Positions 1,865 to 46,250 of a stretch of DNA of 64,000 nucleotides are shown piece by piece. This stretch comes from Laetmonice hystrix (taxonomy: Eukaryota): positions 45,260,001 through 45,324,000 of the forward strand of contig OZ249437.1 of the NCBI GenBank assembly GCA_965235115.1, written 5' to 3'. The translations under genes and the position numbers were made by a program. The notes beneath the pieces were generated by a model. The model saw nothing but the letters and a program-made list of their open reading frames with translations, was not told where the DNA came from and ran no database searches. Within the stretch, counting starts at the first letter, position 1; the number at the start of each line of letters is the position of its first letter.

Positions 1865-12370
<10,506 letters not shown>

Positions 12371-12694: not shown

Positions 12695-13165
12695 AGACTT
12701 GATCAGGAAGACAGAACTGTGTAAGATGTCAAGCGATTTTCATAAAGTTCCATATGAATATCCCGGTAATGTCTGCATTGAGTTTCTTGCTCTGACCAGA
12801 CAAGAAGTGCTAGACTTGATTAGGAAGACAGAACTGTGTAAGATGTCAAGCGATTTTCATGAAGTTCTATATGAATATCCCGGTAATGTCTGCATTGAGT
12901 TTCTTGCTCTGATCAGACAAGAAGTGCTAGACTTGATTAGGAAGACAGAACTGTGTAAGATGTCAAGTGATTTTCATAAAGTTCTATATGAATATCCCGG
13001 TATAATGTCTGCATTGAGTTTCTTGCTCTGACCAGACAAGAAGTGCTAGACTTGATTAGGAAGACAGAACTGTGTAAGATGTCAAGCGATTTTTATAAAG
13101 TTCCATATGAATATTCCGGTAATGTTTGCATTGAGTTTCTTGCTCTGACCAGACAAGAAATGCTA
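12695..13165. repeat. Tandem repeat, 4 x ~117 bp, downstream of the GLDC stop
   Basis: Unit AGACTTGAT.AGGAAGACAGAACTGTGTAAGATGTCAAG... restarts at 12695, 12812, 12929 and 13048; copy 3 has a 2-bp insertion. Confidence 0.95.
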
Positions 13166-18900: not shown

Positions 18901-21900
18901 TTCAACTTAAACAATTAAACCACCTTTTCTAAACTCCTAGAATTTTTAAAGTTCTACTTGTAGCTAATAGGACTGACTAATTTAATCTGAACTATTCACT
19001 CAGTAATGATGGCAGATGTGTCCATAAACCACAATGACCAGAAAAGAAAAACAAGTGTCCTGCAACTCACGTGACCATATTTTTGGGCTTGATGTAATGG
19101 TTGTAGTAGACCCGGCGTTGTTGGTCAGCCAATGCTTCAAACACATCTTGTTCACAGGAGAAGTTGGCAATGTAATCAACAACGGTCCGGAACAGATCCT
19201 GTGTGTCAACATGACAGGAATGTTTTCATATCCCTTTGGTTTAAACTACTCCATCTGGGGAAAGCTAAAAGGTTTCCTATTATTTAAAATTATTACCTTG
19301 GCTATTATGTATCAAAACTTCACCTCTTGAACAGCCTAAATAATTAAAGGATAGAGTCGTTTTGGGTTGGTTTGTCCAATTGCATAGGTACTTAAGACAA
19401 ATTAATGATCATTCACGATTAAACCCATGCAGTTTCTGCTGCCAGATGTTTCACACTTACTGGTAGTTTATGATTGAACCCATGAAGTTTCATCTTCAGA
19501 CCTTGACTGTCTGGTGTGAAATCATAACTGTTGAAGAAATAGTAAGATGATAAACATGATTAGTTGTGAGCATTTTAGTTTCTCTAACCTACCAAACATG
19601 TAGCCAGGATCTGAGAAACTGAAAGAAGTAGTTCACTATCTCAACACCAGAGGTCTCTCTTACTCTCTTATCATCCAAAACAAGGTTCTTAAAATAACCT
19701 TTCCTAACTCCTGAAATAAATCACTATATTAACTTCATTCCAAGAACTTTGGTTTACTCTCATCACCTGGCTCAAAATCCCGTCCCAACGAAGAAAACAT
19801 TTAAGAAAACTTCATGAGATGTACATATTCTTACCTGAGTTGAGCAACATCAGCAGCATATGCTATCTCAGACAGGTTGTGTTCAAGTACCCGTACAAAG
19901 AGATCCAAAAGTGTAAACCTGTAAATTAAAGGTAATACAGCATCAGTGATAACTGCTGACGTCACATCAGAATAGAGTAGGGTACAACAGAATAGTAGGG
20001 TCTGGAAAACATCTGAAAACGTACATGCTAGTGCATGCTAGGAGGGAGGGATTGAAATGTCAGCCATGCAGGTTTGTGTAACAGAGCATAAATTTATGAG
20101 GGACATTTTAAGTTGATTTCTAGCAATCTCTATAGTGGCGTAGAGAAATTGGCTAGCTTTCAATTATTTAAGGCTTACGTTGTGGCCGACTCCGACACCA
20201 TCGGATTCCGTAAATGAAAGCAAAGGTAGGCTGAAAACAGTGAAGATATGACGGCTATATTTTATACCACATTGTCAACCTCTTTACAATGACCAGTTCA
20301 CTGATCAACATCCACATGGCTCTTCTCCCACACCAATAATAATGGGATACAGATAGTCTCACATGTCACATCATTTTTATTAAAGATATTCTTCCACATC
20401 TCCCATTATGAATGACAGTTAGTTTAAGATCATAATAAATCTTCGATCTTTTCACAGCTTGCAAAATTTCAGATACATTTGCCTTTGTCAGACATTACCC
20501 CATGGCAAACAAAGAAATGAGATTTGCACAGCTGAACTGATAAACAATTGGAACAAACTTTACCTTTCGGTATGTTAAACTTATTGTCCTTACAGTACCA
20601 CAGTCTGCTTTGGTCATTTTCTTTTATGGCCTCTGGGTACTGCAACAAACATCAACTTAGTGCCAATACTGGTAGAATAAAGTCATAAAACACTGACAAA
20701 CAGATTACCAGTAGTTCATTACAATTACAAATAATAAGTAAATTAAAATTATTGACTAAGTCTATACCTTTGACAGATTTAAATTTTCAGGGACCTGCAC
20801 AGAAAGTAGAATTAAAACCTCTGGATGAGCATTTCTTTTTTCAGATGTACATCAATTTCATATCACCAACCTGAGTATATTCCTTATCAGCATCCCTGAG
20901 AGTAAAGTCTGTGGCTGTAAGAGCAAAGTACCAGCTGACACAAATATATCAACATATTTCTTATCTATGGATAAGAAAATCTCATTTGGCAAGAATGACT
21001 TCATTTGCAGAAATTACAAAATTAGTGAAATACACATTCCATAACAAAGCTGACAATATAGATTCCCTGTGGGTCGCTTGCTAAAACACTAACAGGCACA
21101 CTTGTTGAGTCCCGATGCCTGATTCTTGCCGACCACCACTGTGCTCATTTTAAGTCACTCACCAATATAAGTGTTTTCATGGGGAAGGTGAAAGGCAGGA
21201 TTCTTATCATCTTCTGTAACACAAATAATATGACAAGTTAAATCACACTTATTTTGATGAGATGAATGATAGCACAATAGTTTGAGTCAAACAAAAATTA
21301 AATGTTAACAAGACGAGGAGGGGGTGGCAAACAATGTATCCACGGCACAACTCACCTTTCCAGGCTTTTAGCCAATGTTCAGGAACATCTGTTAGATAAG
21401 ATGAGAAAACATTGTCAGCATATCAATAGGATCTGCTAAATCTTACTGAGTGAACTTGGACATGACCTATCTAACATACTCGTTTGCTACTCAATCTTAT
21501 CAAACTGAAATCACACACATGTATGCCTATCAAGGGAAAAGAAGGATGGTAACATAAAAGAATGAAATTAAGCTCACTCGGAACCACTTAGCCTTAAAAC
21601 CTTTGACCTCATGGACAAAGATATAGTGTGACTCTCTTATGCAAATGATATTTCAAGATGTTTTGATTCAGTACCTTTACCTCCCTTGAGGGGTCCAAGC
21701 AAAAGTTACCAAGATGGGTCACAATGAAAAAAGAATAAAGCCTACCACTGGCAGAGAAGGGCATCCGGAACCAAGGCTCCATCTTATCACAGACACCATC
21801 CTCAGAAAATCTCTTCGAATAGAGCAGGAATGAAGCCGACTCTGGTAGAAGTTTGTTTTGACAGGAAGCAATGAGATCCTCATCATACTCAGTGAGTAAC

Positions 21901-24900
21901 AATTCTCCTGTCAGGTAGTCGGTCGGAGGATACAGCTGCATGTTCTCAGCAAGTTTCTCAACCGTGTCTGCCGGGTCGGACTGTCAGGACAAATGTTACA
22001 GGAGCCGTTAGGATTTTCCTTCAGGTATACTTATACTACTGTTCAAATTTGGTCATCACATATTCTTGGAATAATTCAGGTGTTTTGTTCATTTTAGCAT
22101 CATAACATTCCACAAAAGATTCAACAAAAAATGGCACTGCTTTATCATATTTCCCAGGATATTACAAAAATGCATTTATTATTGAAATTAACAGTACTGA
22201 AGAGTAAATCTATACTGGCTTGTTAATGCTGTAAGTCAACATTATCATTAATGTACCTCTTCCTGCCATCTGAAATCGTTGGCTTCAATCTTACAAATCT
22301 CATCATACACTCGACGGTTTGGCCCAACCTGCCGCAACATGTTCAGGTAATGAAATACTGCTGTCAACACCTGCAAAATCGAAATTTTCAAGTTTTACAA
22401 ATTTTACAACCCAATTGCCACAACCAGCCACACAGGCTTACTCTTGTTTTATGGTACATGTACTTTGTTTTATCCCTGTGTATTATTGAGGAGTCTGGGA
22501 AAATCCATTGTTCAAAGATGGCTTCACTTGTCAGTTGTGACCACTGGTTGTAACTGACCAGTCAGACCCTTACAGCACTGGTCCTATTATGTCATTTAAT
22601 GAAGTCAGACTCACATATGACTCACCTCAAATACATGGTCCATGCCCAATTCTGTCAGTGTGATACTGATACTGAAGATGGCACAAGTACTGTTGTGTTC
22701 AAAGCCACTCTCACTGTTCCCACCACACAATGACAGAGCCCACACCCTGCAAAGATAATTCCATCCACTCTCAACTCCAGCCTATATCATTTAACAAACT
22801 ACTGGGGTAGTCATCAGAAAAAAAAGGACACTGACCTTTTCTTGAGGTAGGAAAGTATGCTCCCTGCGCCCTCATGGCCAACCAACCATCCAATGTAATG
22901 TAATGGCTTCACCCTGAAATCAACAATTAAAGGCTCAAGAGACCCTGGTTGTAACTTTTTTTGAAACACACAAACATATTCACAACCATATTCATATCTT
23001 TATAGAGGAAAGTATCATCAATTAAATAAAACCTTTTTTTGATTTAATCTCACATAATTAGCTCCATTAACAGCTCAATAACTACAAGTGTGCGATATTA
23101 TCATACGAAAGGAAAGCTGAACTTACTTGTAGTTTTTGAGTAATGAAGGCAAGGACCAGGTTACCTCGACTTGATGAACGTTCTTGACAGGAACTGCCTT
23201 GTATAACTTACAAAATCCGTCAGTTTCAAACGGGTTTTCCTTGTCATCAAAAACCACCTTCTGAAGTTGGTTATTAGGGACTTTTGAAAATATTGCCTCG
23301 ACCCATTCTTGAAGGGTGTCAAGTGAATGGAGAGACTGGATTGCAAGTGCCATATAGTGTGAGGAGTAGGCCTTTTTGTGAAACTCCCTGAGAACCTGAT
23401 AGACGTCAACTCCATCCTTTTCCGGCTGTATCTTCAAGGATTCTTTGTTACCTGAAAGTATGATTCCAATGTATTTCTGCCTGATGCCAACAGAGGCCAT
23501 CACTTTATACATTAATCGAGGAGATTTATACCTTTTCCTGGATACAAAGCTGCATTTGTACTTTGAGATAATGAATACAATCTGTACCCCACATGAATTT
23601 TCCCATTGGGTGACCATCTCTTGCCAGGCTTCCCAGGAATTGTTCCTTGCGATTTCGATCACTTTGTAAGGCCATATCAAATTCTGCATCATAAGAAAAG
23701 ATGGAATAAAATTACATTTTTATCACAGACAACACTTGATCGTTTAAGAAGTATGATTTACTATCTTTTAAAAATAAATTACAAATTATAATTGTTAGAA
23801 AAATGTATAACTTTCCTTTTGTTCCCTTTTCCAATTTTGAGAGAATATTTTGCATCTATACTTACCACTGTCCACAGCCTGTATCTCACGATCAACACTA
23901 CCTTTCTTCATGAGAGGAGAAATGAAAAACTGGGCAAACATATCCAGGGCCTCATACAGATGAGTTCGGTTGATATCAAAGTAGAACACTGTCTGAAACA
24001 TAATTCAAACATCATTTGCTGGTATCTTTTTCCACATTCAGGAAATTATTTTGAGTTTTTCATGTTTCATTTTGCTATGAATCAGAATTAGACATGTTAT
24101 GTGGTATAACACAACCTGTGATCTGCCAGTTATACTTACCCTTTCACAATCAGTGAATGCATTTGATCCTCCGCCATGTTTCTTTATGTACGCATCAAAT
24201 TCATTCTCATCAGGAAACTTCTCACTTCCCATGAAGACCACTGTTTAACAAACAAAAATGCTGATCCCAGTATCCCTTTATTACTTATGTCATAACCAAT
24301 AAAATACCCACATGTAATGTCACCACCTTTAAATCACTATTCAGTTCCTTCTGGTCTCCAAACAAGTTAAGATTTCCTCATATGAACAGTGTCTGAAAGG
24401 AGCAGCTCACCAACAGCTATAAAAAGACACCACCCCATCAATTTCTAGCCCTATAATGATGCGTTTCTAAATGACTGAATAAAAAATGCAGACCTCTTCT
24501 GATCGGGTGAATAAAAGATCTTGCGTACCCCTATAACAATATCAGAACCACCAAGTAAATCTGCCTATGATATACCCAGTAAATGTTCTCTACTTCCGTT
24601 GTGGCAGTTATTTTCCAGATTTATCATTTTTTAACTTATAGACAAGAAAAAGAAATATATTTGAAATGAAAAGATAAATTTCTCCTAGGCTAACATACTG
24701 TGTTCTAGGAAGTGGGCAAGTCCAGGGGCCTGCGGAAGATCGGAAAAGCTGCCAACTCCCACACTCAGTGCAGCTGCAGACTTCAAAACAAAATAACAGA
24801 TATTTACAATAAATGTATCTACATATCTTTACCATTGTGCTTTTAGCTCATGATCCCTCCATAATGTACACTATGCTATTTTCAGTTAATCAAAAAGATA

Positions 24901-26139
24901 AAATATCTAGTTTACATTGGACCTGTCAGTCAAAATCTCTGAGGAAAACTTATGTTAAAGTTGTAGAAACCAGTGATATTTTTTTAGACATAAAGACTAG
25001 TAATATCAATGCATGCCTACCAGTTTTTCATTCTGTGCACTTCCCTTCTCAACATCATTAGCCTTTGAATTTTTGGTCTGGTCAGAAATAAGCAATGCTC
25101 TGAAACCACTGTCCAGCTGGATGGCTCTGTAATAAACACAAAAATGAAGTGTTCATATTGCAACTTAAGTATATGCTTATATAATATTTCAGCCTATTAT
25201 CTTGAAACACTTCCATAAAAATATCTGAGAGCAGTGGCTTGTTACGTTATGGACCCCAGGAGGTCCACTCTGTGACCCCTTAGGCTATGGCCCTATTTCA
25301 CAATCTTATATTTTTTCATGCAGAAAAACGGCCATTCTGCCGGAAAGATCCCTCTACTTCTGGTGCGCATGCATATTTATCGCACTTGTGGACTGTAGAA
25401 ATGTTTCCTTTATACTTATAGCCCTGCTGGCAGGCGTTTAACGGCACTATTGTGCTGGCATTACCGGACTGACTGACCCTCGGACTGCCGGCACAATACT
25501 CACAATCCATTGAACAGTTGCCAGTAGAACTATGAAGTCCACAACTGCAATAATTGCACATGCGCACCAGAAATACTGGGATCATTCCAGTAGAATTGCC
25601 GTTCGAGAATCTTGCTGTCTTCCGGCAAAATAACCAATGCATTTCTTTTATGCAGGCACTACTGGTTCCATAATTAATAAACAGCTCGGTAGAAATTTGA
25701 AAAGTCTGGAAGCAAAATACAAAGATAAAATCCAAAGCAAATAGAATTTGCAAGAATACCAGTATTTAAATATTACTAAGTTAATATGGCTTATATAATA
25801 CTGGTACCGGTATAATGTAAATAATTGGCAGTGCATATTTAGCCAGCAAAGATTAAAGTCCTAAAGATTAAATTGGGTGTAAATTTGGTGTTAATTAGAT
25901 AAATATATACACTGCCTAAATAATATTACTTAGGCCTAATTAAATTTAAATTAGTAGATGTATATTACAACTAGATCTACAACTTACAGTACAAGTTACA
26001 ACTAATGAATCAATGTATAAGAAAATCACCCCTTGCTTTGCCACAAGTTATTAAAAAAGTATCAGTCAATATTTACGTACCTATACACTCTTTTGTCATT
26101 TGGAGACTTGACAACATCGTCTAATTGTCTGACAGGCAT
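15977..26139 (-). CDS. NRDC: Nardilysin (N-arginine dibasic convertase, M16A metallopeptidase), 26 exons, ~1059 aa from the first in-frame ATG
   Basis: Exons: 26139-26081, 25126-25021, 24780-24699, 24240-24140, 23992-23866, 23683-23588, 23451-23127, 22913-22836, 22746-22626, 22370-22257, 21980-21746, 21388-21356, 21213-21163, 20914-20871, 20639-20564, 20230-20179, 19918-19835, 19527-19461, 19198-19071, 18722-18488, 18357-18214, 17942-17806, 17425-17335, 17125-17009, 16908-16813, 16357-15977; total 3180 nt, in frame. Inverted zinc motif GLAHFLEH, VFMGSEKFPDEN, KPLHYIGWLVGHEG, and NRDC-type EGLVQGN, CEDPHLGEEVSRNW and IMDFHKSLTMFPP. Confidence 0.93.
25334..25631. mobile_element. Degenerate inverted-repeat element in NRDC intron 1
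   Basis: TGGTGCGCATGCATATTTATCGCACTTGTGGACT (left) matches the reverse complement of AGTCCACAACTGCAATAATTGCACATGCGCACCA (right); outer ends T.TGCCGGAA. Confidence 0.4.
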
Positions 26140-26925
26140 TTTAACACTGGCCGAGCCTGAAGCTGAATGCAAAGCTCGGACCCACTTCCCAATCCCACTG
26201 GCACTGCCACGGCAATGCAATGGTGAATGGATCAACAACACAGTGACACAACGAGGGGCCCACTGCCCACACAACGCCGCTTCTTGACAGGACTCAGGAG
26301 CGAGGTCCAGGTTAGGACGACACACTAATCGTCGAGTCCGGTTTGGCCTAGAGATCTTTCTTAAGATCAACGAAAAAATGGACGCTCTACGCGTATTCGT
26401 TTGCACAATTAGTGCATAATCAAGGGGTAGGCCCTACCGTCCGCGTGTTTCTGCCAGGCTGCGAGCCGGCAAATCCCAGACTGCTAATCCTTACCGAACT
26501 GCTCATTTGACCAAAGTGATGGAACTCTGCGAGGGTAGGTTCACCCTGAGTCGTCCACTACCTTGAGTCGACCACCCACCCTAAATCAAAACCATCTGAC
26601 CTCTGGTGGATGATTCAAGAACCACAAGAAAGAGTAAAAAATGGGCTTTCAGATGATATTAGTTGTAATGGGTTGGCCCTAACCAATGCAGAGTTAATGG
26701 GGTGGTCGACTCAAGGTGGGTGGACGACTCAAGGTGAATCTACCCGATATGCGCTCAGCATGCTCAGGGTTTTCAGCAACAGTCTAAAACAACCTGCGTA
26801 ATTATGATTTAGACTACATGTATTCTTGATCACAAAATACATTTTTATAGGCCCATCTATGCACAAATATATTTTTAGGTGGCCAAGTGGCGCTTCTTTT
26901 AGGTGAGGTAAGGGGCATTTGTCGG
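26140..26925. promoter_or_regulatory. Putative bidirectional promoter between NRDC (-) and the EF-hand/MTBD-like gene (+)
   Basis: Divergent start codons about 790 bp apart, CpG-richer than flanking introns, CCAAT box near 26683. Depends on the tentative first exon at 26926. Confidence 0.5.
26533..26745. mobile_element. MITE-like element (213 bp, ~45-bp TIR) inside the divergent promoter region
   Basis: GGGTAGGTTCACCCTGAGTCGTCCACTACCTTGAGTCGACCACCC (26533-26577) matches the reverse complement of GGGTGGTCGACTCAAGGTGGGTGGACGACTCAAGGTGAATCTACCC (26700-26745). Confidence 0.7.
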
Positions 26926-29900
26926 ATGGCAGCGCATGTTGTTTACAAATGGCCGAGTAGTGACGAACAGCGGTCTCAGCCAGACTAACGTTTAGCCGTT
27001 TAGGCAAGTATTCGGAAGGATTCCTTCTCTTCTAGCATCCTATCCGGAATGCAATCTGATCAAGTTACCGGCTAGGGCCGTATCGAGCAATTGTGGACTT
27101 AGATTTAGAAGTGTTTCCTTCTGGCTGCCGCTTTATTATAGCATAACGTTAGCCATGCCCATAGTCATACTCATAGTCATAGCATAGGTAGTCCGCCTAA
27201 CCGGCTAGCCTAACGTCGTTACAAAAAAAAGTTATGCTTAAGTTATGCTAAGTTAATAGTTAGGCCTAGGCCCCCCTAGATCTACACACTTACCGTACAG
27301 TTAACGTTACAGTTACAGATACCGCTAGGCCTAACGTTACTTGATCTTGGACTTGGGATAAGTTAGTTGCCCCCCCCCCCCCCCCGGCCCCGTGCCCTTT
27401 TCTGAAGCGATCGAAGGACGCCCCTGCCCCCCCCCCCCATGATTCTGAAAGAACTGCCCAGGCTTTCTTTTTGACAAAGAGGTGCCCGTTTAAAAAACTT
27501 TTGATAAAATGATAAATAAATAAATCAAGGCAGTGTATATTTAGCGGGCAACGGTCTTAGTTTGACTAGTTACCGAATGCAAATTAACAAATTGCTTGGG
27601 TTAGGGCAATTAGGGTCGGGCCTCGGCTAGGGTTAGTTGTATTTTTATCTCAAATTCTTGAATTTGGCTGGGTGTTAATTAGGTGATAATTGGATATTTG
27701 GCCCCTTACTTAGTAGACTTTTTTTATGGGTCGCACTTTTCCCCCGCGGACTACCACAGTCTGGCACAGAATACCGAGGCCGACCGCAGATCACCACAGA
27801 CGACTGCAGACCAATGAGCGTGTACCACTGTGGATCACCACAGACTAGTTTAAAGGTGCTATTCGTGAAAAAAAATTCAATTTTTTTATTTTTAATTTTG
27901 TTGACGTTTATGTGATCCCACCTATCATGGAAATAGATTCAAACCAAAGGAAATCCAAATTTTTCATGGATAACGGCACAAATGGGGCTCTCTCAGAAGG
28001 CCTGTGGAGACCCTGACACGCCCCACCGTAGGAAATGGCTCTATCTCGGTGCGCACCGAGATAGGTTTCAAATGCTGCACACAAACTAATAGAAGGTTTA
28101 TCAGGCCAATGGTATCGGTAGGAATTTTTTCTAGTACTATGTGCACAATGTATGATAGGAGAAATGTCATTCTGTGCGAGACGAATAGCACCTTTAAAGA
28201 CCGGGGATCTAACGGGTGAAAACAGAAGAGTGGCAACCCCCCCCCCCCCCCCCCCCCCCCCATCTGCCTATATTTTCTGCTCTAAACTTAGCCAGTGTAG
28301 CTCAACCTAAATTTGCAGTCATCCTCGGTAGCCTGCAGTAAAAAGTGAGGCGCGTCAATTCTTCTTTTTTTTTATTGGGTACATCCTAACTTCGCAGAAC
28401 TCCATTCATGCACATTACACCAGGTGAATATGTTCGATTATTCTTTTTGTTGTTTATTTTAGTGAGGTCATTTTACAGGTCTATGGAATACTTTTTGAAA
28501 TGGGAACGCTGTCAGCAGAAGGTCACCAGTACTTGGTGGAACAGATGTTTACGGACAACGATAGTAGCCATACAGGTGTGCTTAGTGCCTACCAACTACA
28601 GGGGATTCATGCTGACATGCGCCTTGGTGGAATAAGCATGCCACAGGTTTGTACCTATGTATAATCCTTTATCAGTTAATGCAAAGTCATCTATGCTAGT
28701 TTGAAACAATAGAGTCTGCATGATTTCTGAATGTTTTGCATCCTAGTAGTACACTTAATGTGCCAGGCCCTCACATAACAATATCTGTTTTCCAGGTAGA
28801 GGCCGCAATACAATACACTTGTGTTGGTGACGATGGGTGTGACCAGAGTGAACTCATTGATGTTCTCCGGGAGATGGACCGAAGGTACTTCCTGGTACAG
28901 GATTTCCGTTGGGAGTTCTCCATGCTGGACTACAACCAGTCTAACACACTCTCAGAGGACCAGGCTAAGTAGGTATTTAGTTAACAAAGATCTGTGCTGA
29001 ATTCTAACAGTAAACTCAGGGGTCTCATTCACCTCTGCTGGTTTTTTATCTGTGACTGTCATCCTGTCTTTTCCATAGCTGCATCTGTGATATATACAGG
29101 TTAATACTTCAACCAGGTGGCTCGTTCAATCTGTACACGGAGCGTGTTTCTCAAAGCAGCAATGGGAGAAGTTTTTACGTGGCAGAGTTGTACCAGCTAG
29201 TGGTGTCAGCTTTGCTGAGATAGAAGTTCTCCTTTGTGATATTCCAAGTTGGAGTAATATATTGGATGAGGAAGTAGAAGAGAGACGATTGCATGAAGGT
29301 AGGCTGCAGTAGATATTATGCAAGTTCTTAAAGCAAAAAATCGAAAGCATGCAAATTCTAAAAATAAATCGCAAAAATATAAGGCAAAAGATCTATGTGA
29401 AAGGAATTTGTCAGGTGTAAAATATAAGGCAAAAGATCCATGTGAAAGGAATTTGTCAGGTGTAAATGTTATGGAGATATGAAGCATTGTTGGTTTTGAA
29501 AGAAGGAAAAATGCATCTTTTTTTCTTATAGAGCAAAAGCGAAAACAAATGGAGATGGCACATCGTGTAAAGGAAGAGAGAGAAAAGCGACATAAACAGC
29601 GTGCAGATGAGAAGAAAAGAAAAGAAGAAGAAGACAGGAAAAAACAAGACTCTGAGAACCAAAGAAGGCTTGAAGAAGAGGTAACAAGTTATCAGAATTC
29701 AATGCCCTTCCAGGTGGTCATGTAATTGAAATCACTAGCTTTTGTTTTTCTCCTATTTTATTTTAAATGATACAAACAATTGCATGTTGGTAAAGGCTAG
29801 ATTATCCTCAGCTCATGACAGGTAAGGTTGAATGATAAAAGACCGTCTTTAATTTTAGGGTGTCTGGGGAGCCTGTCACAATAAATGCCACAACCCTCAT

Positions 29901-32900
29901 TTTGCATAGTTGAGATCATCATCACTCGCAATTAAAACGAATTTCGTTCTGAAGATTGAATTTGAGAAAACTGTACCACCTTTCAACCTGGAAAAATATT
30001 GTGATATTGTTTGCTTAATGTGTCTCAAATAACATTGATTTTGCTGTCATTGATTTAACTACTGCTAGGCTATGGATAATAATCCTTGTGCTTCTCTAGC
30101 TTGAAAAAGAACTGAGGGAGAAAGAAAAGTCTGAGGAGGCAAGGCGAAGGAAGCAGTTGGAGGAAGAAGAAGGTAAATTGTAGTTTCACTCTAAGAATAT
30201 TCACAGCAGGCCATAAATAATTACACTTATTACCTTATATACCAGCGTTTGGTTTTCTATTGATAATTTTTTAATGAAGATGTACATCTTGACTTAGACT
30301 TTTATATTCAACTTTAATGGTAATGTGTTTTAGTTTGAAAAAAGTTTTGATTTGAGGTACATATTGGCAGTAATTTGGGCAAAGAAATCTCCTATATTTA
30401 GTTTCAGATACCTTTGGAGTATAGGAAACTTTCTCATGCCAATGTTATTCTAATCAGGAGATTTACATTTTCTTCTTAGAAAGGGGAAGAAGGGAGGCAG
30501 AGGAACGAGAGAAGAAATACCAAGAAGAAAAAGCCAGGGAAGAAAGCATAAAACAACAGGTAGATGATTAAATATTGTTTGAACATGTTTTCTGAAAATT
30601 GCTTTGTAGGTGATAATAAAAACCAACATAAACAAATGAACTGCCAGAAACCTGAAGGAACTCATACACCAGTTTACCATGAGTGCCATCTCACATGAGC
30701 TGGAAAATGCTGTTTATCTCATTTTAGTTCTCAATACACAATGAAATAAAAAAACAACAACTAATGAGTTGTCTATACTTTTGGAAAAGAAACCGTTTCT
30801 GTCATCTTATGCAGGAATTGTTGGAGCTACAGCGCTTAAAGGAACTGCAGGAGAAAAATCAACAGGAGGAGGCAGAGAGAAAACAGAAGGAGGAAAAGGA
30901 AGCTATGAAAGATGAAGAGATACTCAAGGTACATTACTCCTAGGGTTATGAATATCAAATGTCAACAAAGTACAAATCTATGTCTACATAATGTGGCTTC
31001 AACACAGAAGGTATCTGAGATACACGTAATAATCTAAAGGGATCACAGAATCAAAGTTCGAAGATGATGAAAACAAACAAAAAAATTGCAAAGTAACAAG
31101 TTAAAGGACACGAGAATCTTGTTGCATTGCGGTCTTTCCTAAGTGGAGTTCTTGTGCATGAAATATTTTATTTAACATGATACAGAATTTGTTGGTCGTA
31201 TCTCTATTGCGCAAAATCTTTGAGGACAGAACCTTGTGAGGTGCTCAAATGAATGCATTATTGTATAGTTTAGACATAGATGTATTTAAGATTTAAGAGT
31301 GAAATTATGGTGCTATGAAATTAAAATAATGAATAGATATGATGGTGGGGTTTCTTCATAGCAAGCTATCAAGGATGAGAAGGACTCTGCAGAGAAGATT
31401 GAAGAGGCGAAGAAGAAAGCTCAGGTAGCCAAAGACGCACGATCAAAGAAAGAACATGAAGATGAGGAGAAGAGACAGCGACTGAGGAATAAAGGTAGGG
31501 TCTGACCATATTCTATATAACAGTGGTAGAGAACTCGGTGATTGATCAGCTAAAATAGAGACAAAGGCAGGTCTTTAGTTTACTGATGTATACATTCCTA
31601 ATGATATAGACGTTGATGTTCTTCACTTTAGAGGCTCGTAACAAACGTATCAAGTATCAGCTGAAGGTGGCAGTAAAGACACGTGACCGTGGGAAGTTGC
31701 CAGAGGCGGCAAAAGAGTTTAAAGAGGCCAAGCTGCCAGACGATGACCTCGACCTGGAGAAGGCTGAACGGATTCTCAAGGAATGGACTGCGCGAGATGG
31801 TCAGTTAATGAAAGAATTTGCAAATATGTTGTAACCATCTTTGCCACAAAGTTAAGGGATAGAAGTTGATGTGTAACTGTACTCACTCTACTTTGCATCA
31901 AGAGTCTACTCACAAGAGTCTTATTATACCCTTCAACTACTGATTGTACTTACAGCCAGGTGACATTTTATCATGCTTTTACATTAATATATTGTAGGTC
32001 TGACGAATGCAATGGACAAGAGACACCTAAAAGAACTGGAAAGTGCTATCAACTTTGTTAAGAGAAACAACTTTGAGCCTCAACTTGCCAAGGAAATGAT
32101 TGAGGCAAACAAGATTCTCCTTCAGCTTCGGCGTCTTGAGAGAATCCGGGCCGAGATCCTTGAATTAAAACAATCCACCGTGGCCGAGATCCGTAGTTAT
32201 CAGAAACCACCAACAATTGTACACACGGTCATGATTGCAACATTCCTCCTCCATGGCCACAAAGAAAAAGAGACAAAGGTAGGAAAAATTTGGAAATGTC
32301 ATAACTGGCAAACTTACATCAGGCAAAGTGGAATCTAAATTAAGGTAGCAAGGTGTCGTCATCAACAATCACTTGGCTCAAACCATGGTGTCCTATGTTA
32401 CTGCTGGAAAAAGATGAGTGAAATGGAGAGAGATATATATAATTATAATAAATGGCAGTTGGCCGCTCTGAAAGGTTCTGCCTGGGATACACTCAGACAA
32501 TGAACTGACTGTTCCGTCTACTCTACGACACTATGGCTGGATCACAGGTTTCAGAGCACCTCAACATGACAGTATAGGTTCAGGACTACCTGTACCATTG
32601 TAACATTTCTTTATGCAGTCAGATACTGACAGTGACGAAGATGCCACTGGTGAGGTATTAGAGGTAAAATAAAACTTCATCGATACATACATGTGGCACC
32701 GTTTAAAGTGGTAGCATGAGAGTAGTATTTGATTGTGCATGAGCAATATTTTTTCACCCTTTTCCACTAAACATACTTGCTTGTGGGAGACACTTTGAAT
32801 AGAAAATCAACAAGGTTTATTTTAAAAAAATTTTTAGTGTAACTGTTTCATGGTTCAAGAATTTAACAAATTTGTATGCTCTTCTTTGGAATCTGATGCT

Positions 32901-34026
32901 GTGAGTTAAAGGTGGTTATATAATATCGAACCTGCAAAGGTTTGAGGCCATGTCGCAAACGAAGTAAGGTAGTCAAGAAAACGTTTGAGGATGGTTTGAC
33001 ATAGTTCTAATTGGTTGAAACTGGCATCAAACTGATTATATTGAACTTTGTGAGTCCTCTTCACATATCACTGACACTATAGCCTCACTGTACAAGTGTA
33101 CCGGTACTTCCATCACTGCATATGCACCGAGTAATGCATGTATGCTGATTTTATAGAGCTAAAAGAGGGATTCCATATATTTGAATTCAAACTTTCTAAA
33201 CAATTCTTGCTGTTCTCTATGTCATTGTCTATCCCTTGAAACCGGCCTAGAGAAAATAGAAAGGGGTACAAAGGAAACTTCTGACATCACAGAAAGTATT
33301 CCAGATCGTGTATATGCTAGTTTGTGTTGGGGAACCATTGGTATCTCATACATAATCCTCTAATTTTGCCATAGCTAAACATTCAACATTATTTTATAAA
33401 CAGCTTTGTTTTTTGGTTCATTTACGCTCTGATGTAGGATTGGAAAAATGTGCAAGCACTGGTGGGAAAGACAGGGAAAGATGGACTGAAGCGACGCTGC
33501 CTCCAGTGTGAGCCACACAATCTGAACCCTGAAGCTGCTGCTCGTGCCAAGGTCCTCCTCGGTCAGTTTGGACTAGATGACGTTCGTGACGTATCAGCCG
33601 GGGCAGCCACCTTCTACCTCTGGGTAGGTGTTACCTTACATTTGGAACACAGCACAGCCAGGGTCAGCATACCACAGTACCAATATGAACCCCTTCACCA
33701 AGCATCATTAAGTCAGTCAAGACTGCATAGCAAGACTTCTCAGATTAACAAGCAGAAAATAACGACAAGCAATCAACCAATTTCCCCCCTTTGAACCCCA
33801 CTGTACTATGTGGCCAGGCCCGTCAGAATATAAGAGCATTCCTAGATATGATACTGTATGTGTTGCTCAAATATAAATATCCTTTGTAGAAGTCAGTCAT
33901 TACTGACTTTTCACGTGGTGTCTCTAGTTCTATAAGCACAGGAAAAGAATAATAAGCCAACTGGTTTTGTTGCTGTAGAGTTCAACAATGATTGAAGAGC
34001 TGGAGGCCAAGCAAGCTGCAGCATGA
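26926..34026 (+). CDS. Uncharacterised ~603-aa protein: N-terminal EF-hand-like region, long E/K/R-rich helix, C-terminal dynein microtubule-binding-domain-like fold
   Basis: Exons: 26926-26956 (tentative, weak donor GTAGTG), 28398-28423, 28479-28646, 28796-28968, 29117-29298, 29532-29680, 30100-30172, 30480-30559, 30815-30928, 31362-31494, 31632-31799, 31998-32278, 33438-33623, 33979-34026 (TGA); total 1812 nt, in frame. EF-like loops FTDNDSSHTGVLSAYQL and MLDYNQSNTLSEDQAK. C-terminus AEIRSYQKPPTIVHTVMIATFLLHG...DWKNVQAL...VSAGAATFYLW. Confidence 0.85.
27854..28193. mobile_element. Kolobok-like MITE, 340 bp, TTAA TSD
   Basis: TTAA|AGGTGCTATTCGT ... ACGAATAGCACCT|TTAA: perfect 13-bp TIR. Confidence 0.75.
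29374..29466. repeat. 45-bp tandem duplication, intronic
   Basis: AAAATATAAGGCAAAAGATC(T/C)ATGTGAAAGGAATTTGTCAGGTGT starts at 29374 and 29419. Confidence 0.9.
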
Positions 34027-36406
34027 TGGAGCAGCTCCCTAAGAAGATGCAGCAACCCAAGCGACAGACTCAGCAACAACACAAAAGTGAAATCTACTGT
34101 GATATCTCTTCTGTAATGTTCAGAAAAATAAAATTAATTGCCCGACTTCAAGTTGAAGGGTATTTAGTACTGAAGAAAGGTATGCCTCACTTCCTTTTTG
34201 GCAGTAGATTTTAAATTGTTATTGATTCTAACATCAAGTCTGCATTTTATGATCATATAAAGCCACTGGAGTATTGACATTTACAGGTATATTTGTAATC
34301 AGGCGTGTATGTTTTGTACTTCTTTTCTGTAAGTGCTGGCCTGTTGGCCTTTTGATCGCTTATTCGTAAAAATGGCTGGCCCATTATGCGTGACCGTCTC
34401 CAGTCTATTTTGACTTTGTTGTTGATACAGTAGCCATAGATGCTGTCAAAGTATGCCAAAAATATGATATAAATATCTAGATGTCACTTGGGCATTCAAT
34501 TGATTTAATAAAGTAGTGTAAAAGTTTGGCCAGATTGCAGTCGTTTTGGTTTACAAGTATGTTGAAAAAACTCAGCAGTTCCTTTTTTGAAGGGGGGGGG
34601 GGACATTGACAGCAGTTCTGTTATTAGAATAAGGGACGCTATGAGGGACTGGAACAAATCCCCCCAAATTTGCATTCTAAAGGTAACAACACAGCTTCAC
34701 ATGTGTAGCTGCCCTTTATTACAACACTGGCCATTAAACGATTACCTTATTAACACATGCAGTTACCACCTGATCTGGTATCTTTCAATACTTCAGGTTT
34801 ACACATACACTCAGAAGTGATAACATTTTGGACTGTAGTTAAGAACGAACGAATTTACGTTGTGTCATAATTCATTCAATCTGTATGTGAATGGGCCCTC
34901 TCTGAGCTTACGTATGTCAAAAATCCAAAAAGGTCCACATTCTATTGTTTCTTCAGTTGCATACAGATCATTATCACGTACAGTTCAAAGCAGTATTTGA
35001 CCCACCTTCCACCACGTGTCTTTTTTTACGTAGTTACATTATACAGCATTAAACAAGTACAGTTCGTCAAGAGCATTTTGTACTTGCAGTGAAAGAGAAA
35101 TTGTGTTTTTTAGCCATTCACCAAATTTGTTTTTGTTCAAGGAAGTGTTAACAGATTACAGCCTCCTGTAACGTTTTAGTAAACACGTCACCAATTCGGT
35201 ATCATCAGAGTAGAACCTTTACATAAATAAATGTGCCAAAGATGTACACAACAGTAGTTTTGAGAGAGGAAGCCTAACCACCATTCTTGTGACTGTATAC
35301 AATGTAATTTCAACCATTACAAACATTTATGTGCTGCAACATCACCTCTGAGAAAATCGCTACTTGGCAGCTTTGTTTCATTACTAACCTAGTTATTACT
35401 TTCATAAAGCCATTCATGCTGCTAACCTAGGAAAACTCAAGACTGCACTCGGTACCATGTTACTGACAGCAGGTGCTAAAAATGGTTTCAAGGTTTTCAC
35501 ACTCTTTCCCCACCACAGCTTTCACCAGAAGTTCTACGCTTACAAATCTCAGCTCACTTTTTGAACTTGTTGCCGAAGGTATTCTTTAAAATAGAGAAAA
35601 CAATCAATAGCAGAATCAATCGGCGATCATGCTAGAGAGTTAATTCTCTGTAAAAATGTAATAAAATAAAAATAGCAGAATTTTAGTTGGGTTTGGTTTC
35701 GTTATTTAAGGACGGCCACTAGAACGTCGAAGCAATGACAACACTTGATAGAAGAATCATACTCTCCAAGGTATAGCAGCCTCAACATGCATACATCAAC
35801 ACAGATACAGATCTGCCTCTTTATATTATAGACTTCATTTACATCAAAACAAAGCTCATGCAATACATTCTTTGAAAACGGGTAACCTTTCTGCAGCGAT
35901 ATATAACTACTGCAGTTCACAAACATATTAAAATGTTTGACCTGTCATGATCTCCATATTAGAATGGTACTGCGGCTTATAATCTATCTTCTACCCGGAC
36001 GTATAACTCCTTTCTTTGAGTTTGTCACAATAATGTACTTACAGAGTAACCGGTATTTCAGTTGATAAACTCCACAATGCAATGTCAATCCAGTTTATAC
36101 TGGTTCACCAGAAGATATTTTACTTCAATCTCTGTGGTCTTCCCACTTATCCTGGCAACACTTTGGTCTTCCAGTTCAGTTTCACTGAGCAATTCATTCA
36201 AAAAGACTGACATCTTGTAGATGAGATACATTATTCGATTTTAAATAACACTGACTTGAAATAACCTACAATTGATATGACGTTGGTTGTATGATGCTCA
36301 CCGATGTCCTGGCACTTCGACAAAGATCAATCATTTTCCAGTGACACAGTCATATTATCACATCTGCTCAGAGGTTCTGGTTCCCTTTATGCATCCTGCC
36401 AGATGT

Positions 36407-39400
36407 TCACTTTAGATCCAGCATCATGGAGGTAGGGTTTTCTAGATACGACTTCCATAAATTGGAAAAACGTGCCATGGTGGCGCCATCCACTATTCGA
36501 TGGTCTGCAGACCAGCTGACTTGCATGACATGTGCAGGGTAGATGGAGCCAGCATGATCAAATCGTGGCAGTTTCTGCAGCATGTAAAGAATGGACATGA
36601 ATTAGGATTATTCATGAAGAGTAGGACTGACCACTTGTTCACTCATCCTTACTTAGAATGCCAACTTTGTGACTCTTGACAGGCAGAGGTGACCAGTGAA
36701 AGTGGGGAACTACATGCTCATTTAACAATGAAATTTGTGCCTTGTGATATCTTATTAAAAATCAAATCGTAGATTTACAACTACTTGAACATGGTGGTTT
36801 TTTTTCATAATCAGCAATTTGTATGTTTTTTGCTCAAAATCTCTGGACAAAGAAAGTTGTTTTTTAATCGTGGTACTATTGTAAACGGCACAAGTATAAA
36901 AAGAACTTCACTGATAGTACTTGCCTGCATTTTTCCAAGGGCCCCAATTGCAACTGCAGGTGGCATAATGACTGGTTTAGTATATGTACCTCCAATCTGG
37001 AATGAAAACAATCAGGATTTATATAATGTTTAATAATCAAAATAGGAACTTCAGAACCTAAATCAATTATCCCATCAAACACTTTTTCTACCCGTAATAA
37101 GAAAAGCCTATCGGCAGTGGTTGCTAAAAGACAAACTTACAGTGCCAATGTTAGAGAGTGCAAACGTGGAGCCTGTGAGGTCTTGTGGTCCAAGCTTTCC
37201 AGCCGAGCCCAACGAGATCATACGATTCATATCTGTGGCAATCTCAAACACACTGTGAGACTGGACGTTTTTAATGACTGGCACCAACAAACCCTCAGGG
37301 GAATCAAAGGCAAAACCTATGTTGTGTGCAGCCTGAAAGAGAAATATGTACATGTGCTTGAATTCAAATTATATAACTCAGTTTGATGTTAAATAGAAAG
37401 ACTGAACATGAACCCCCTTTTGGGTGAACCCTCTTTCAGAATTATGACCCCCCACATTTACATAGTGTCTAGGTCTAGGCTTACAGTAAGACCATCCTTC
37501 CCCCAAAAGGCACAACACTACCCTCTAACGGAAGCTGAAAAGTTACAGAGCCAGAGAAGATGACGACCAAATGACATCATAATAAAGACACGTTCACAAT
37601 TTCCGGGGGAGACCCCACAGACCCCCCTCCCCCTGGAAACGAAGTCCCCCCTTTGAAAAATCCACCATAGAGGATGATAGAGCCCTGCTAACCTTGTATG
37701 TTATCTTCTCGCATTTCTCATCCACCGTGGCATTTAGAATTGGGAAGTGTATTAAGGCCATTGAACATGCCTGAAACAAAATATAGTCTGCTCCTAGAAA
37801 TTGTTCAAGGTATGTCACAAAATCAAGGATAATACATTTATCTTTTGTTTTACTGAAGTGAAATAGCTATTGTGTCTGAAGTTATTTAAGTAAACGACCT
37901 ACTCTGCATGACATGTACTTTACTTATGCATTACTACTTTTGCACCTTTTAGTTTTACTGCACAACTCATGCAATGTTCCCATTCTTAATTCTAGAAATG
38001 GACAGCCTAGAACAATAGCCACCTTCACAAAGATAGGCATGTAGGAAAACTTGATGCCCCGTTGTTCCGACATCTCTTTCAAGTGACCTTTGACTTCAAC
38101 CAATTTGGTCAGGTCAATCTCGTCACAGTAACCAAAATGCGGGATATTCTGAGCCTCAGTCATCATCTTGGCCATGGCTTTGCGGACTCCCTTGATTGGT
38201 TCTGTATGGTCCTTGAGGTCAATGACTGGCGAGGGTCTCACTGGAGCTGCAGGCGTTGGTGGGGCTTTAGGTTTGGTTGGTGCTGGGGATGCTGCCACAA
38301 CTGCAGGTTGTGCTTTTGCTATGTGCGAGAGAAGAAAAAGTTTACTACTGGTATCATTTAAGGAATTTTAAAGAGAAGGGTATCTCACAAAAGGCAAAAC
38401 TGCCTATACTGTATAATAGTTGTATATCATTTTGTGTTTCTAAAGACGTATTTTTAAAATTGCTTATTTTTCTACTCAGATCAAATCATAACGTGCAAAT
38501 ACAAACTTACCTGCAGCTGCAGCTGCAGCTGCCCCTTCTTTTATGTAAAGAAGAACATCTTCTTTTAAAATGCGACAATCTTTTCCAGTGCCTTGGACCT
38601 CTGCCAACTTAATCTATAACAGTATCCAAGCATAATTTTTTTTATTCATAACTTTAATTTTCATACCTTTATAATTACAATTTTTTTTACTGATAACCAT
38701 CTTCCAATTTCTATTGACACCTCAGTTAATAGGAAGAAGTAAAGAAGTCCCTGGAAAGGGTCACCAACCTTGTGCTCTATTGCCAGCCTTCGCACTGCTG
38801 GAGTGGCCAGGACCTTCTCTCCTTTAATGTCCTGCATCATATGTGCCATGGGGTCCGAGGAAGCAACGGCAACATCGCCTTGGTCAACCTGGCCCGACTC
38901 CATAGAATCTAATCACCCAACAAAATATGGCAACCCAATTTACATTTAACTCTAACCTGAGAATGATGAAACTTAATGCAAGTTAACAAACCTTAGCCAA
39001 GGCATTGCTTTTCAATATTTTACTTTCTTGTTTCATAAATCACCTAGGTCAGTTGAGTGAAACTTTCCCAAGCTAGAATATAGTACACCTACCCGTGGCA
39101 CCTTCATCCAGCTCAATGTCCACCAGAGGCTGACCAACAAGTGCTGTATCATCAACCTCATAGTAAAGGTTCCTGATGATCCCATCATACCGACTGGTGA
39201 TGGTCACCGATGCCTTGTCACTCTGGACCTCACAGATGCTGTCAAACTGAGAAACGCGGTCACCTTCTGACACAAACCTGACAAATACAATTGAAAACTT
39301 TTACAATTTATTCAGGTAATTATCTATGTACAGTAGACTTCACATATAACGGCTGCATATACCAGACAATCACCTATAACGTACTGAAACTGGAAGTCCC

Positions 39401-41910: not shown

Positions 41911-46250
<4,340 letters not shown>

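What the first reader, a model, noticed from the sequence alone, without database searches (positions are those of the whole stretch)
28398..34026. Non-motor protein with a stand-alone dynein microtubule-binding-domain-like fold behind EF-hands and a long charged helix
Seen: the spliced ORF ends LKQSTVAEIRSYQKPPTIVHTVMIATFLLHGHKEKETKDWKNVQALV...DDVRDVSAGAATFYLWSSTMIEELEAK. Known: the dynein heavy-chain stalk tip (MTBD) has the pattern E-[VI]-[RK]-S-x3-PP-x2-V-x2-[VA]-[ML]-x5-LL-G-x(n)-DW ... S-x-A-[AC]-x4-W, which this segment follows from start to end. The gene has no AAA ring. It instead carries two EF-hand-like loops and ~185 aa of E/K/R-rich sequence typical of single alpha-helices. Inference: a possibly Ca2+-sensitive microtubule tether or spacer (head, rod of roughly 25-30 nm, MTBD), for example in cilia or sperm axonemes, that reuses the dynein track-binding module without a motor. 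I do not recognise a named gene with this architecture.
Basis: partly seen in the sequence, partly recalled or inferred. Interest (0 to 1): 0.85.

Follow-up and report, generated by a model that had tools for sequence, protein, structure and literature searches.

The report
Motor-less protein with dynein microtubule-binding domain
This is a real 12-exon gene for a 577-residue protein that carries a true homologue of dynein's microtubule-binding tip but no motor, behind a degenerate four-EF-hand head and a long charged helix. It belongs to an unnamed family conserved from sponges to amphioxus, and its function has never been tested.

Summary

**C-terminal domain.** The last ~125-180 aa are homologous to the dynein stalk tip and microtubule-binding domain (MTBD):
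- A family profile hits only dynein heavy chains in the PDB (57 of 57, best E 2.4e-11).
- The protein stops 15 residues after the last MTBD helix, so it has no return stalk and no AAA ring.
- No dynein gene lies nearby.

**N-terminal domain.** It is a four-EF-hand fold, but the loops are degenerate, so Ca2+ sensing is doubtful.

**Middle.** About 187 aa are 61% E/K/R, as in a single alpha-helix. Across 54 orthologues (the window's protein included) this spacer is 106-262 aa.

**Family.** Orthologues occur in sponges, corals, molluscs, annelids, brachiopods, nemerteans, bryozoans, echinoderms, amphioxus and ascidians. All are unnamed or misnamed ("trichohyalin-like").

**Same module elsewhere.** It also ends KY-like transglutaminase proteins (one paralogue in this genome), a CLCA-like protein and a membrane protein.

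**Function.** Microtubule binding is inferred, not shown. I found no paper that describes the family.

The parts
28500..28646 (+). Exon 1 (aa 1-49): start codon and EF-hand-like motif 1 (loop D-S-S-H-T-G-V-L-S-A-Y-Q)
   Evidence: gene model. N-terminus aligns with orthologue N-termini. Loop analysis.
28796..28968 (+). Exon 2 (aa 50-107): EF-hand-like motif 2 (invariant Cys at loop positions 2 and 8), the long central helix and the EF3 loop (D-Y-N-Q-S-N-T-L-S-E-D-Q)
   Evidence: Weak Pfam EF-hand_6 hit, 13.6 bits against a cut-off of 25.
29117..29298 (+). Exon 3 (aa 107-168): exit helix of EF3, EF-hand-like motif 4 (invariant Arg at loop position 1) and the start of the charged helix
   Evidence: The acceptor at 29116/29117 is the only one that keeps the frame.
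29532..29680 (+). Exon 4 (aa 168-217): E/K/R-rich spacer
30100..30172 (+). Exon 5 (aa 218-242): E/K/R-rich spacer
30480..30559 (+). Exon 6 (aa 242-268): E/K/R-rich spacer
30815..30928 (+). Exon 7 (aa 269-306): E/K/R-rich spacer
31362..31494 (+). Exon 8 (aa 307-351): end of the E/K/R-rich spacer
31632..31799 (+). Exon 9 (aa 351-407): first conserved helical-hairpin unit upstream of the MTBD-like domain
   Evidence: Conserved in all orthologues. By eye it repeats the pattern of the next unit.
31998..32278 (+). Exon 10 (aa 407-500): second helical hairpin, CC1-like helix, and MTBD helices H1-H2 (motif EIRSYQKPP..V..VM)
   Evidence: PDB phmmer hit to the DNAH10 stalk tip, E 2.5e-4. Exhaustive HMMER search gave 414 relatives. 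Profile and fold matches.
33438..33623 (+). Exon 11 (aa 501-562): MTBD helices H3-H6 (DW...GKTGK..LKRR...VRDVSAGAATFYLW)
   Evidence: Aligned to dynein H3-H6 in the profile alignment. The own-genome profile hit covers 33432-33638.
33979..34026 (+). Exon 12 (aa 563-577 plus stop): 15-residue continuation of H6, a CC2 stub of about 4 turns. The protein ends here, so there is no return stalk.
   Evidence: In 25 of the 26 family proteins that carry both motifs, the chain ends 10-57 aa after the start of the S.GAA..F.W motif; one has 198 aa.

Best explanation
The locus encodes a non-motor protein built from four parts.

1. A compact N-terminal four-EF-hand domain (aa 1-~155). Its loops are degenerate, so it is more likely a partner-binding head than a Ca2+ sensor.
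2. A ~190-200 aa ER/K-type charged helix that would act as a semi-rigid spacer of roughly 28-30 nm.
3. Two short helical hairpins.
4. A C-terminal domain homologous to the tip of the dynein stalk. It has a CC1-like helix, the six-helix MTBD and only a ~15-residue CC2 stub.

The fold and the H1 motif that dynein uses on tubulin are both retained, and a family-specific conserved basic cluster (GKTGK..LKRR) sits on the H3/H4 region. The most likely mechanism is therefore ATP-independent docking of the C-terminal domain on the microtubule lattice. Dynein binds the tubulin intradimer interface, and this domain would be expected to use the same site. The charged helix would then hold the EF-hand head at a fixed distance to bind another component. 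Without a long stalk or an AAA ring, the affinity cannot be switched by helix sliding, so this would be a static tether.

The same C-terminal module is fused to KY-like transglutaminase-fold proteins, a CLCA-like protein and a tetraspan membrane protein in other invertebrates. That fits a portable anchoring module.

**Shown:** the gene model, homology to the dynein MTBD, the fold, the four-EF-hand fold, the spacer composition, the phyletic spread and the modular reuse.

**Inferred:** microtubule binding, the binding site, the monomeric helix and the cellular location.
For: **Gene model.** Twelve AG/GT exons give one 577-aa frame. It is colinear over its full length with orthologues of 478-609 aa, at 46-52% identity to Lineus, Lingula, Plakobranchus and Apostichopus.

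**MTBD homology.**
- Exon 10 against the PDB: E 2.5e-4 to DNAH10 residues 3217-3291.
- A 25-sequence family profile against the PDB: 57 hits, all dynein heavy chains, best DNAH6 at E 2.4e-11. The alignment covers profile positions 5-157 of 171, from CC1 to H6.
- The sponge orthologue P0043 passes Pfam PF12777 (26 bits against a cut-off of 24).

**Fold.**
- The AF2 model has pLDDT 92.1 and pTM 0.82.
- 49 of the 50 best Foldseek PDB hits are dynein stalk or MTBD; the exception is 7jtk_C. The microtubule-bound mouse MTBD 6rzb_C gives TM 0.71 and rmsd 2.7 Å.

**Conserved basic positions.** These are the R of EIRSY, K-x-W, GKtGk..LKRR and vRD.S.

**Head.** The AF2 model has pLDDT 94.7 and shows four helix-loop-helix units. 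All listed Foldseek PDB hits are EF-hand proteins.

**Spacer.** It is 61.5% E+K+R, 12% hydrophobic, with one Gly and no Pro, and is dense in i/i+4 charge pairs. In 54 orthologues it is 106-262 aa (median 174), with E+K+R 0.63 and G+P about 1%.

**Not a dynein gene.**
- Pfam MT hits in this genome lie elsewhere; the nearest is at C2:48.9 Mb, against the window at 45.26-45.32 Mb.
- The neighbours are an M16 peptidase and a 2-oxoacid dehydrogenase E2, both on the opposite strand.

**Modular reuse.** The module sits on Transglut_core + Ig-like_KY proteins, a CD20-like protein and a CLCA-like protein. An own-genome paralogue has three Ig-like_KY domains.
Against: No experiment or expression datum exists for any member.

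- The window's own exons do not reach the Pfam MT cut-off on their own.
- By eye, on the alignment, the family has Gln at the H3 position that dynein fills with Lys/Arg. I did not tabulate this column.
- Net charge of the core is only about -5 to +10 across members, and +2 in the window.
- Two of the three non-dynein solved structures that share the fold look like radial-spoke proteins (probably RSP2 and EFCAB5; chain identities inferred). The papers I read describe EFCAB5's contacts as being with other spoke proteins; I did not examine RSP2's contacts (PMC11779644).
- No RNA run holding the locus was found.
- I found no vertebrate, arthropod or nematode orthologue among the named hits, so no inference from a model organism is available.
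Confidence: 0.6

Rival explanations
1. The MTBD-like domain does not touch tubulin. It is a protein-protein docking module that fixes the protein inside a larger cytoskeletal or axonemal complex. This is what the same fold appears to do in radial-spoke proteins. The EF-hand head and rod then bridge to a second complex.
Confidence: 0.25
2. The protein is a natural competitor or roadblock for dynein. A permanently bound, unswitchable MTBD occupies dynein's site on tubulin and so locally tunes dynein stepping or axonemal dynein rebinding. The head and rod would be secondary.
For: This is inference only. The fold is the same as dynein's MTBD and presumably uses the same site. The protein has no stalk or AAA ring to release it.
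Against: Nothing tests it. The strongly conserved EF-hand head (53% mean column identity) and the spacer, which keeps its composition and a bounded length range, suggest that the head's position matters, which a simple blocker would not need.
Confidence: 0.1
3. The exons are a fragment, pseudogene or alternative 3' end of a dynein heavy chain gene, or the likeness is chance.
For: None was found. One dynein gene of this genome (C2:48.9 Mb) has an intron 4 nt from the position equivalent to the family's intron before D-W. That would fit an origin by exon capture long ago, not present linkage.
Confidence: 0.01

Closest known systems
Dynein heavy chain stalk tip / microtubule-binding domain (Pfam PF12777 'MT'; e.g. 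mouse DYNC1H1 MTBD 3ERR/6RZB, human DNAH6, DNAH10)
   Different: It has no AAA+ ring, no linker and no long stalk. CC2 is cut to about 15 residues, and CC1 is replaced upstream by helical hairpins. A 3-residue insertion and a basic GKTGK..LKRR cluster follow H3. By eye, the H3 Lys/Arg of dynein is Gln. Affinity cannot be coupled to ATP.
The unnamed orthologous family, annotated 'trichohyalin-like', 'vicilin-like seed storage protein', 'golgin subfamily A member 6-like', 'caldesmon-like' or 'EF-hand domain-containing protein' (e.g. Lineus longissimus P0199, Lingula anatina P0188, Aplysia P0160, Magallana gigas P0181, Apostichopus XP_071837423.1, Branchiostoma P0216, Oscarella P0043)
   Same: The architecture is the same over the full length: four-EF-hand head, ER/K spacer, two hairpins and the MTBD-like end. 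Identity is 34-52%.
   Different: Nothing of substance differs; the window's gene is an ordinary member. The database names come from the low-complexity spacer and are misnomers.
KY-like (kyphoscoliosis peptidase / transglutaminase-like) proteins of marine invertebrates that end in the same module (e.g. Lingula XP_013389753.1, Pinctada KAK3098481.1, own-genome paralogue at G000:C2:28.45 Mb)
   Same: The C-terminal hairpin plus MTBD-like module is the same, at 35-50% identity. In the own-genome paralogue the intron lies at the equivalent point, just before the Trp-containing exon.
   Different: The N-terminal part is Transglut_core plus 1-3 Ig-like_KY domains instead of the EF-hand head and ER/K rod.
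EFCAB5 (mammalian sperm radial spoke 3 stalk protein) and Chlamydomonas RSP2
   Different: No sequence similarity was detected. EFCAB5 is about 1500 aa and has a DPY30 motif. Its described contacts are with other spoke proteins, not tubulin. I inferred the chain identities from residue ranges and did not check them. This is not an orthologue.
Toxoplasma ICMAP2 globular domain on intraconoidal microtubule (PDB 9YA2 chain L; identity inferred from size)
   Different: There is no detectable sequence relation. It comes from a different kingdom-level lineage. The paper does not call the domain dynein-like.

Membership tests
Dynein MTBD / stalk tip (PF12777 MT) | Six short helices H1-H6 at the tip of an antiparallel helix pair | tested here: met
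Dynein MTBD / stalk tip (PF12777 MT) | Significant sequence-profile similarity to dynein stalk tips | tested here: met
   Family profile against the PDB: 57 of 57 hits are dyneins, best E 2.4e-11. Orthologue P0043 scores 26 bits against the Pfam cut-off of 24. The window's single exons alone are below the Pfam threshold, but exon 10 gives E 2.5e-4 against the PDB.
Dynein MTBD / stalk tip (PF12777 MT) | Long CC1/CC2 antiparallel coiled-coil stalk linking to an AAA+ ring | tested here: not met
   The protein ends 15 aa after the H6 Trp. In 25 of 26 family proteins the chain ends 10-57 aa after the start of the H6 motif. No AAA domain occurs in any member scanned.
Dynein MTBD / stalk tip (PF12777 MT) | [quoted passage not shown] | not testable with these tools
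   The one complex prediction gave no verdict, which counts neither for nor against. This needs co-sedimentation or cryo-EM.
EF-hand (calmodulin-like four-EF-hand domain) | Paired helix-loop-helix fold | tested here: met
   AF2 model with pLDDT 94.7 shows four helix-loop-helix units, each with the short beta bridge. All listed Foldseek PDB hits are EF-hand proteins such as calpain PEF, calmodulin, centrin and sorcin. The profile against the PDB gives only EF-hand proteins, weakly (E 3e-3).
EF-hand (calmodulin-like four-EF-hand domain) | Canonical 12-residue Ca2+ loop (acidic or polar ligands at 1, 3, 5 and bidentate Glu at 12) | tested here: not met
   EF1: D at 1 (32/36), Q at 12 (26/36). EF3: D at 1 (34/36), Q at 12 (24/36). 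EF2: V/T at 1. EF4: invariant R at 1. The window has Q at position 12 of both EF1 and EF3. Pfam EF-hand_6 scores 13.6 bits against a cut-off of 25.
ER/K single alpha-helix (SAH) | Long stretch rich in E, K and R with i/i+4 opposite charges, few hydrophobic residues, and no Gly or Pro | tested here: met
   187 aa with 61.5% E+K+R, 11.8% hydrophobic, one Gly, no Pro, and 71 i/i+4 plus 49 i/i+3 opposite-charge pairs. The same composition is seen in 54 orthologues.
ER/K single alpha-helix (SAH) | Stable monomeric helix in solution | not testable with these tools
   This needs CD, SAXS or EM.
EFCAB5 orthologue | Sequence orthology and shared architecture (DPY30 motif, ~1500 aa, RS3 stalk) | tested here: inconclusive
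   Only a fold-level match of the C-terminal domain was found. No EFCAB5 appeared among the named sequence hits. I did not compare it directly with an EFCAB5 sequence.

The most novel reading that the evidence does not exclude
Animals possess a portable, motor-less version of dynein's microtubule-binding domain that arose from a dynein stalk tip before sponges diverged. It serves as a static anchor that fixes diverse cargo domains to the dynein site on tubulin. Those domains include an EF-hand head on a ~30-nm ruler, KY-like transglutaminase-fold enzymes, a CLCA-like protein and a tetraspan membrane protein. Bound there, it may compete with dynein. Vertebrates and ecdysozoans appear to have lost it, which would explain why it was never studied.
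Probability: 0.4. Interest if true: 0.8.

Novelty: new variant of a known kind. Interest (0 to 1): 0.65.

Why it matters
Dynein's MTBD is normally discussed only as the ATP-switched foot of a motor. This would be a conserved metazoan family that uses the same domain alone, fixed in one state. Several things would follow:

- It would be a new class of microtubule-associated protein.
- It would offer a natural 'locked' MTBD for studying how stalk registry sets affinity.
- It could be a natural competitor for dynein's track site.
- It explains dozens of mis-annotated 'trichohyalin-like', 'golgin-like' and 'vicilin-like' gene models in invertebrate genomes.

The fold-level matches to RSP2, EFCAB5 and ICMAP2 hint that MTBD-like modules are a wider and unremarked building block of cilia and other microtubule organelles.

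All of this can be tested directly with one recombinant domain and a microtubule pelleting assay.

Tried and rejected
**Complex prediction.** I folded the MTBD-like core (A1, residues 36-170) with alpha-tubulin (P0305, 1-436) and this genome's intronless beta-tubulin (L009, 1-426). The score was 0.00 and the tool gave no verdict, so this is neither support nor evidence against binding. The tool did not use my alignment.

**Pfam on single exons of the window.** No MT or EF-hand hit passed the threshold. Exon 11 alone against the PDB gave only chance catalase hits. The signal needs the joined domain or a profile.

**RNA evidence.** Only four runs, all from one study and of unrecorded library type (none on record as RNA), hold the locus. 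I therefore did not use read laying, and the splicing rests on canonical sites and orthologue colinearity.

**Shared intron with dynein genes.** One dynein gene has an intron 4 nt away from the family's intron before D-W, and others do not. This is not strong enough to claim exon capture.

**Literature.** I found no paper describing a stand-alone dynein MTBD family, these accessions, or an MTBD in KY/Hillarin proteins. The library lacks most subscription journals, so absence is not proof.

**Mapping tubulin-contact residues.** I could not obtain residue-level contacts from the papers I could read. I have not relied on remembered residue numbers.

**Earlier findings of this scan.** Nothing was on record.

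**Considered and rejected.** Part of a dynein heavy chain gene. Chance similarity. A real trichohyalin, golgin or caldesmon relative, because those names come only from the charged spacer.
Full report
**1. The gene**

I read 28200-34300 and joined the open segments at canonical AG/GT sites. This gives 12 exons on the + strand:

28500-28646, 28796-28968, 29117-29298, 29532-29680, 30100-30172, 30480-30559, 30815-30928, 31362-31494, 31632-31799, 31998-32278, 33438-33623 and 33979-34026.

- The ATG at 28500 is the start. The N-terminus aligns residue for residue with the N-termini of orthologues.
- The gene is bounded upstream by an M16 peptidase gene on the opposite strand, roughly 16-26 kb.
- It is bounded downstream by a 2-oxoacid dehydrogenase E2 gene, also on the opposite strand, near 38 kb.
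- No RNA run holds the locus. The splicing therefore rests on the splice sites and on colinearity with proteins of other species.

**2. The C-terminal domain is a homologue of the dynein MTBD**

Sequence evidence:
- Exon 10 alone (93 aa) finds the stalk tip of DNAH10 in the PDB at E 2.5e-4, aligned at residues 3217-3291.
- An exhaustive HMMER search of 1.84 billion representatives found 414 relatives at E<=1e-3.
- I aligned 25 complete C-terminal domains as A1 and searched the PDB with that profile. All 57 hits at E<0.01 are dynein heavy chains, aligned at the stalk tip from CC1 through H6. The best is DNAH6 at E 2.4e-11.
- The sponge orthologue P0043 passes the curated Pfam threshold for PF12777 'MT'.

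Fold evidence:
- AlphaFold2 on A1 gave pLDDT 92.1 and pTM 0.82. The first sequence is the Plakobranchus orthologue, about 70% identical to the window here.
- 49 of the 50 best Foldseek PDB hits are dynein stalk or MTBD; the exception is the radial-spoke chain 7jtk_C. Examples are 6rzb_C (microtubule-bound mouse MTBD; TM 0.71, rmsd 2.7 Å) and 6kjo (yeast MTBD; rmsd 2.4 Å).

The dynein MTBD is six short helices on an antiparallel CC1/CC2 stalk and binds the tubulin intradimer interface (PMC6629372). Here the chain stops 15 residues after the H6 tryptophan. In 25 of the 26 family proteins that carry both motifs, the chain ends 10-57 residues after the start of the H6 motif, and the spacing between the H1 and H6 motifs is 83 residues in most of them. 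So CC2 is only a stub. Upstream, CC1 is about 25 residues long and is preceded by two helical hairpins.

**3. It is not part of a dynein gene**

- In this genome the family profile finds only the window's gene and one paralogue, plus weak hits to true dyneins.
- All Pfam MT hits lie elsewhere. The nearest is at C2:48.9 Mb, and the window is C2:45.26-45.32 Mb.
- No AAA domain was found in the window's exons or in ten family members.

**4. The head**

- A 36-sequence alignment of the N-terminal ~170 aa (A2, 53% mean column identity) folds with pLDDT 94.7 into four helix-loop-helix units, each with the short beta bridge of an EF loop.
- All listed Foldseek PDB hits are EF-hand proteins: calpain PEF domain, calmodulin, centrin and sorcin.
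- Profile hits to the PDB are weak (E 3e-3) but are all EF-hand proteins.

So the head is a four-EF-hand domain, not just two loops. The loops are degenerate:

| Loop | Position 1 | Position 12 | Other |
|---|---|---|---|
| EF1 | Asp in 32/36 | Gln in 26/36 | |
| EF2 | Val/Thr | Glu in 35/36 | Cys invariant at position 2 and in 33/36 at position 8 |
| EF3 | Asp in 34/36 | Gln in 24/36 | |
| EF4 | invariant Arg | Glu in 35/36 | |

The window's protein has Gln at position 12 of both EF1 and EF3. From general knowledge of EF-hands, loss of the bidentate Glu at position 12 strongly lowers Ca2+ affinity. I therefore rate Ca2+ sensing as doubtful and a partner-binding role as more likely. Three Cys (two invariant, one in 34 of 37) and a near-invariant His (36 of 37; C57, C63, C146, H113 in Lineus numbering) might form a metal site. 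I could not check their distances.

**5. The rod**

- Residues 159-345 are 61.5% E+K+R and 11.8% hydrophobic, with one Gly and no Pro. They contain 71 i/i+4 and 49 i/i+3 opposite-charge pairs and have poor heptad hydrophobicity. This is the signature of an ER/K single alpha-helix.
- At 0.15 nm per residue, 187-204 residues give about 28-30 nm.
- In 54 orthologues (the window's protein included) the spacer has no conserved sequence. Its composition is kept (median E+K+R 0.63, G+P about 1%), and its length stays within 106-262 aa, median 174. This suggests that length and stiffness matter.

**6. The family**

- The N-terminal domain search and cluster look-ups found full-length orthologues in many groups:
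  - gastropods and bivalves;
  - a brachiopod, a nemertean, an annelid and a bryozoan;
  - echinoderms and amphioxus;
  - a coral, sponges and an orthonectid.
- AFDB clusters add an entry whose LOC gene name I take to be ascidian; the tool gave no organism names.
- The closest full-length relative is the Lineus protein (52% identity over 587 alignment columns).
- Every database name derives from the charged spacer: trichohyalin-like, vicilin-like, golgin-like, caldesmon-like, apical junction molecule-like.
- No named hit is from a vertebrate, arthropod or nematode. This is an observation from capped searches, not proof of absence.

**7. The module is portable**

The same hairpin plus MTBD-like end terminates several other kinds of protein:
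- proteins with Transglut_core and Ig-like_KY domains (KY-like) in molluscs and a brachiopod; the ascidian member (P0052) was not domain-scanned;
- an amphioxus protein named CLCA1-like;
- an amphioxus protein with a weak, sub-threshold CD20-like N-terminal hit.

This genome has one such paralogue at C2:28.45 Mb. It has three Ig-like_KY domains, and its intron lies at the equivalent point, just before the Trp-containing exon.

**8. Mechanism**

What is shown is a dynein-type MTBD with these features:
- an intact core and a conserved H1 motif;
- conserved basic residues (the R of EIRSY, K-x-W, GKtGk..LKRR and vRD.S);
- no means of ATP-driven switching.

The best reading is a static microtubule anchor that presents the EF-hand head about 30 nm away. 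I put this at about 0.6.

**9. What did not work**

- A three-chain complex prediction with tubulin gave no verdict.
- Residue-level tubulin contacts could not be extracted from the readable papers.
- A possible shared intron with a dynein gene is off by 4 nt.

**10. Novelty**

- Members are in public databases. A few are machine-labelled with the dynein stalk domain: one scallop fragment is even named 'Cytoplasmic dynein 2 heavy chain 1', and an ESM Atlas cluster carries PF12777 in half its members.
- Nine literature searches found no description of a stand-alone dynein MTBD family, of these proteins, or of the KY-like fusions.
- I class it as a new variant of a known kind. The window's gene itself is an ordinary member of an uncharacterised family.

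**Verdict**

- Interest is 0.65.

Noticed in passing
G000:C2:28453250-28458100 (- strand; loci L002, L004): A paralogue carries the same hairpin plus MTBD-like C-terminal module behind three Ig-like_KY domains (E 3.6e-53) and a transglutaminase-like region. Its intron lies at the equivalent point, just before the Trp-containing exon. It is the only other gene in this genome hit by the family profile.
   Followed up: partly
   Followed up: partly
N-terminal domain, window aa ~56, 63, 113, 146 (exons 2-3, 28796-29298): Three Cys and one His are invariant or nearly so across the window's protein and 36 orthologues (Cys 37/37, 34/37 and 37/37; His 36/37). Two of the Cys lie in the EF2 loop, so this may be a Zn or redox site.
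   Followed up: no
window 28237-28261: An uninterrupted run of 25 C lies about 240 bp upstream of the start codon. It sits in the 2-kb interval between this gene and the divergently oriented M16 peptidase gene, a likely shared promoter region (GC 0.45 against about 0.39 around it).
   Followed up: no
G000:C11:20.67-20.70 Mb and C8:7.81-7.84 Mb (loci L009-L017): These are tandem arrays of intronless beta-tubulin genes (445-446 aa, nearly identical copies). The one alpha-tubulin gene I inspected (L018) has an intron near codon 75, and the other alpha-type hits likewise start near profile position 63.
   Followed up: partly
L004:6700-10000 (G000:C2:28460700-28464000): A long tandem array with a 157-bp period (satellite) lies just upstream of the KY-like paralogue. 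It shows up as a ladder of identical 86-aa ORFs.
   Followed up: no
window 12699-13031: An ORF made of three near-identical ~32-aa units (...IRKTELCKMSSDFHKV.YEYPGNVCIEFLAL...). It is probably a tandem DNA repeat in the stretch between the GLDC-like exon and the M16 peptidase gene.
   Followed up: no
L020 (G000:C2:48917500-48918900): A true dynein heavy chain gene of this genome has an intron 4 nt upstream of the site equivalent to the family's intron before the D-W of helix H3. Other dynein genes checked do not. This is suggestive of old exon capture but is not an identical position.
   Followed up: partly
window 9475-9927 (+), 16000-26400 (-), 37924-38298 (-), 43729-44160 (+): The neighbouring genes are a glycine dehydrogenase C-terminal exon, an M16 (nardilysin/insulysin-like) peptidase and a branched-chain 2-oxoacid dehydrogenase E2-like gene. 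By eye there is also an RNA 3'-phosphate cyclase-like exon, which gave no Pfam hit on that ORF.
   Followed up: partly
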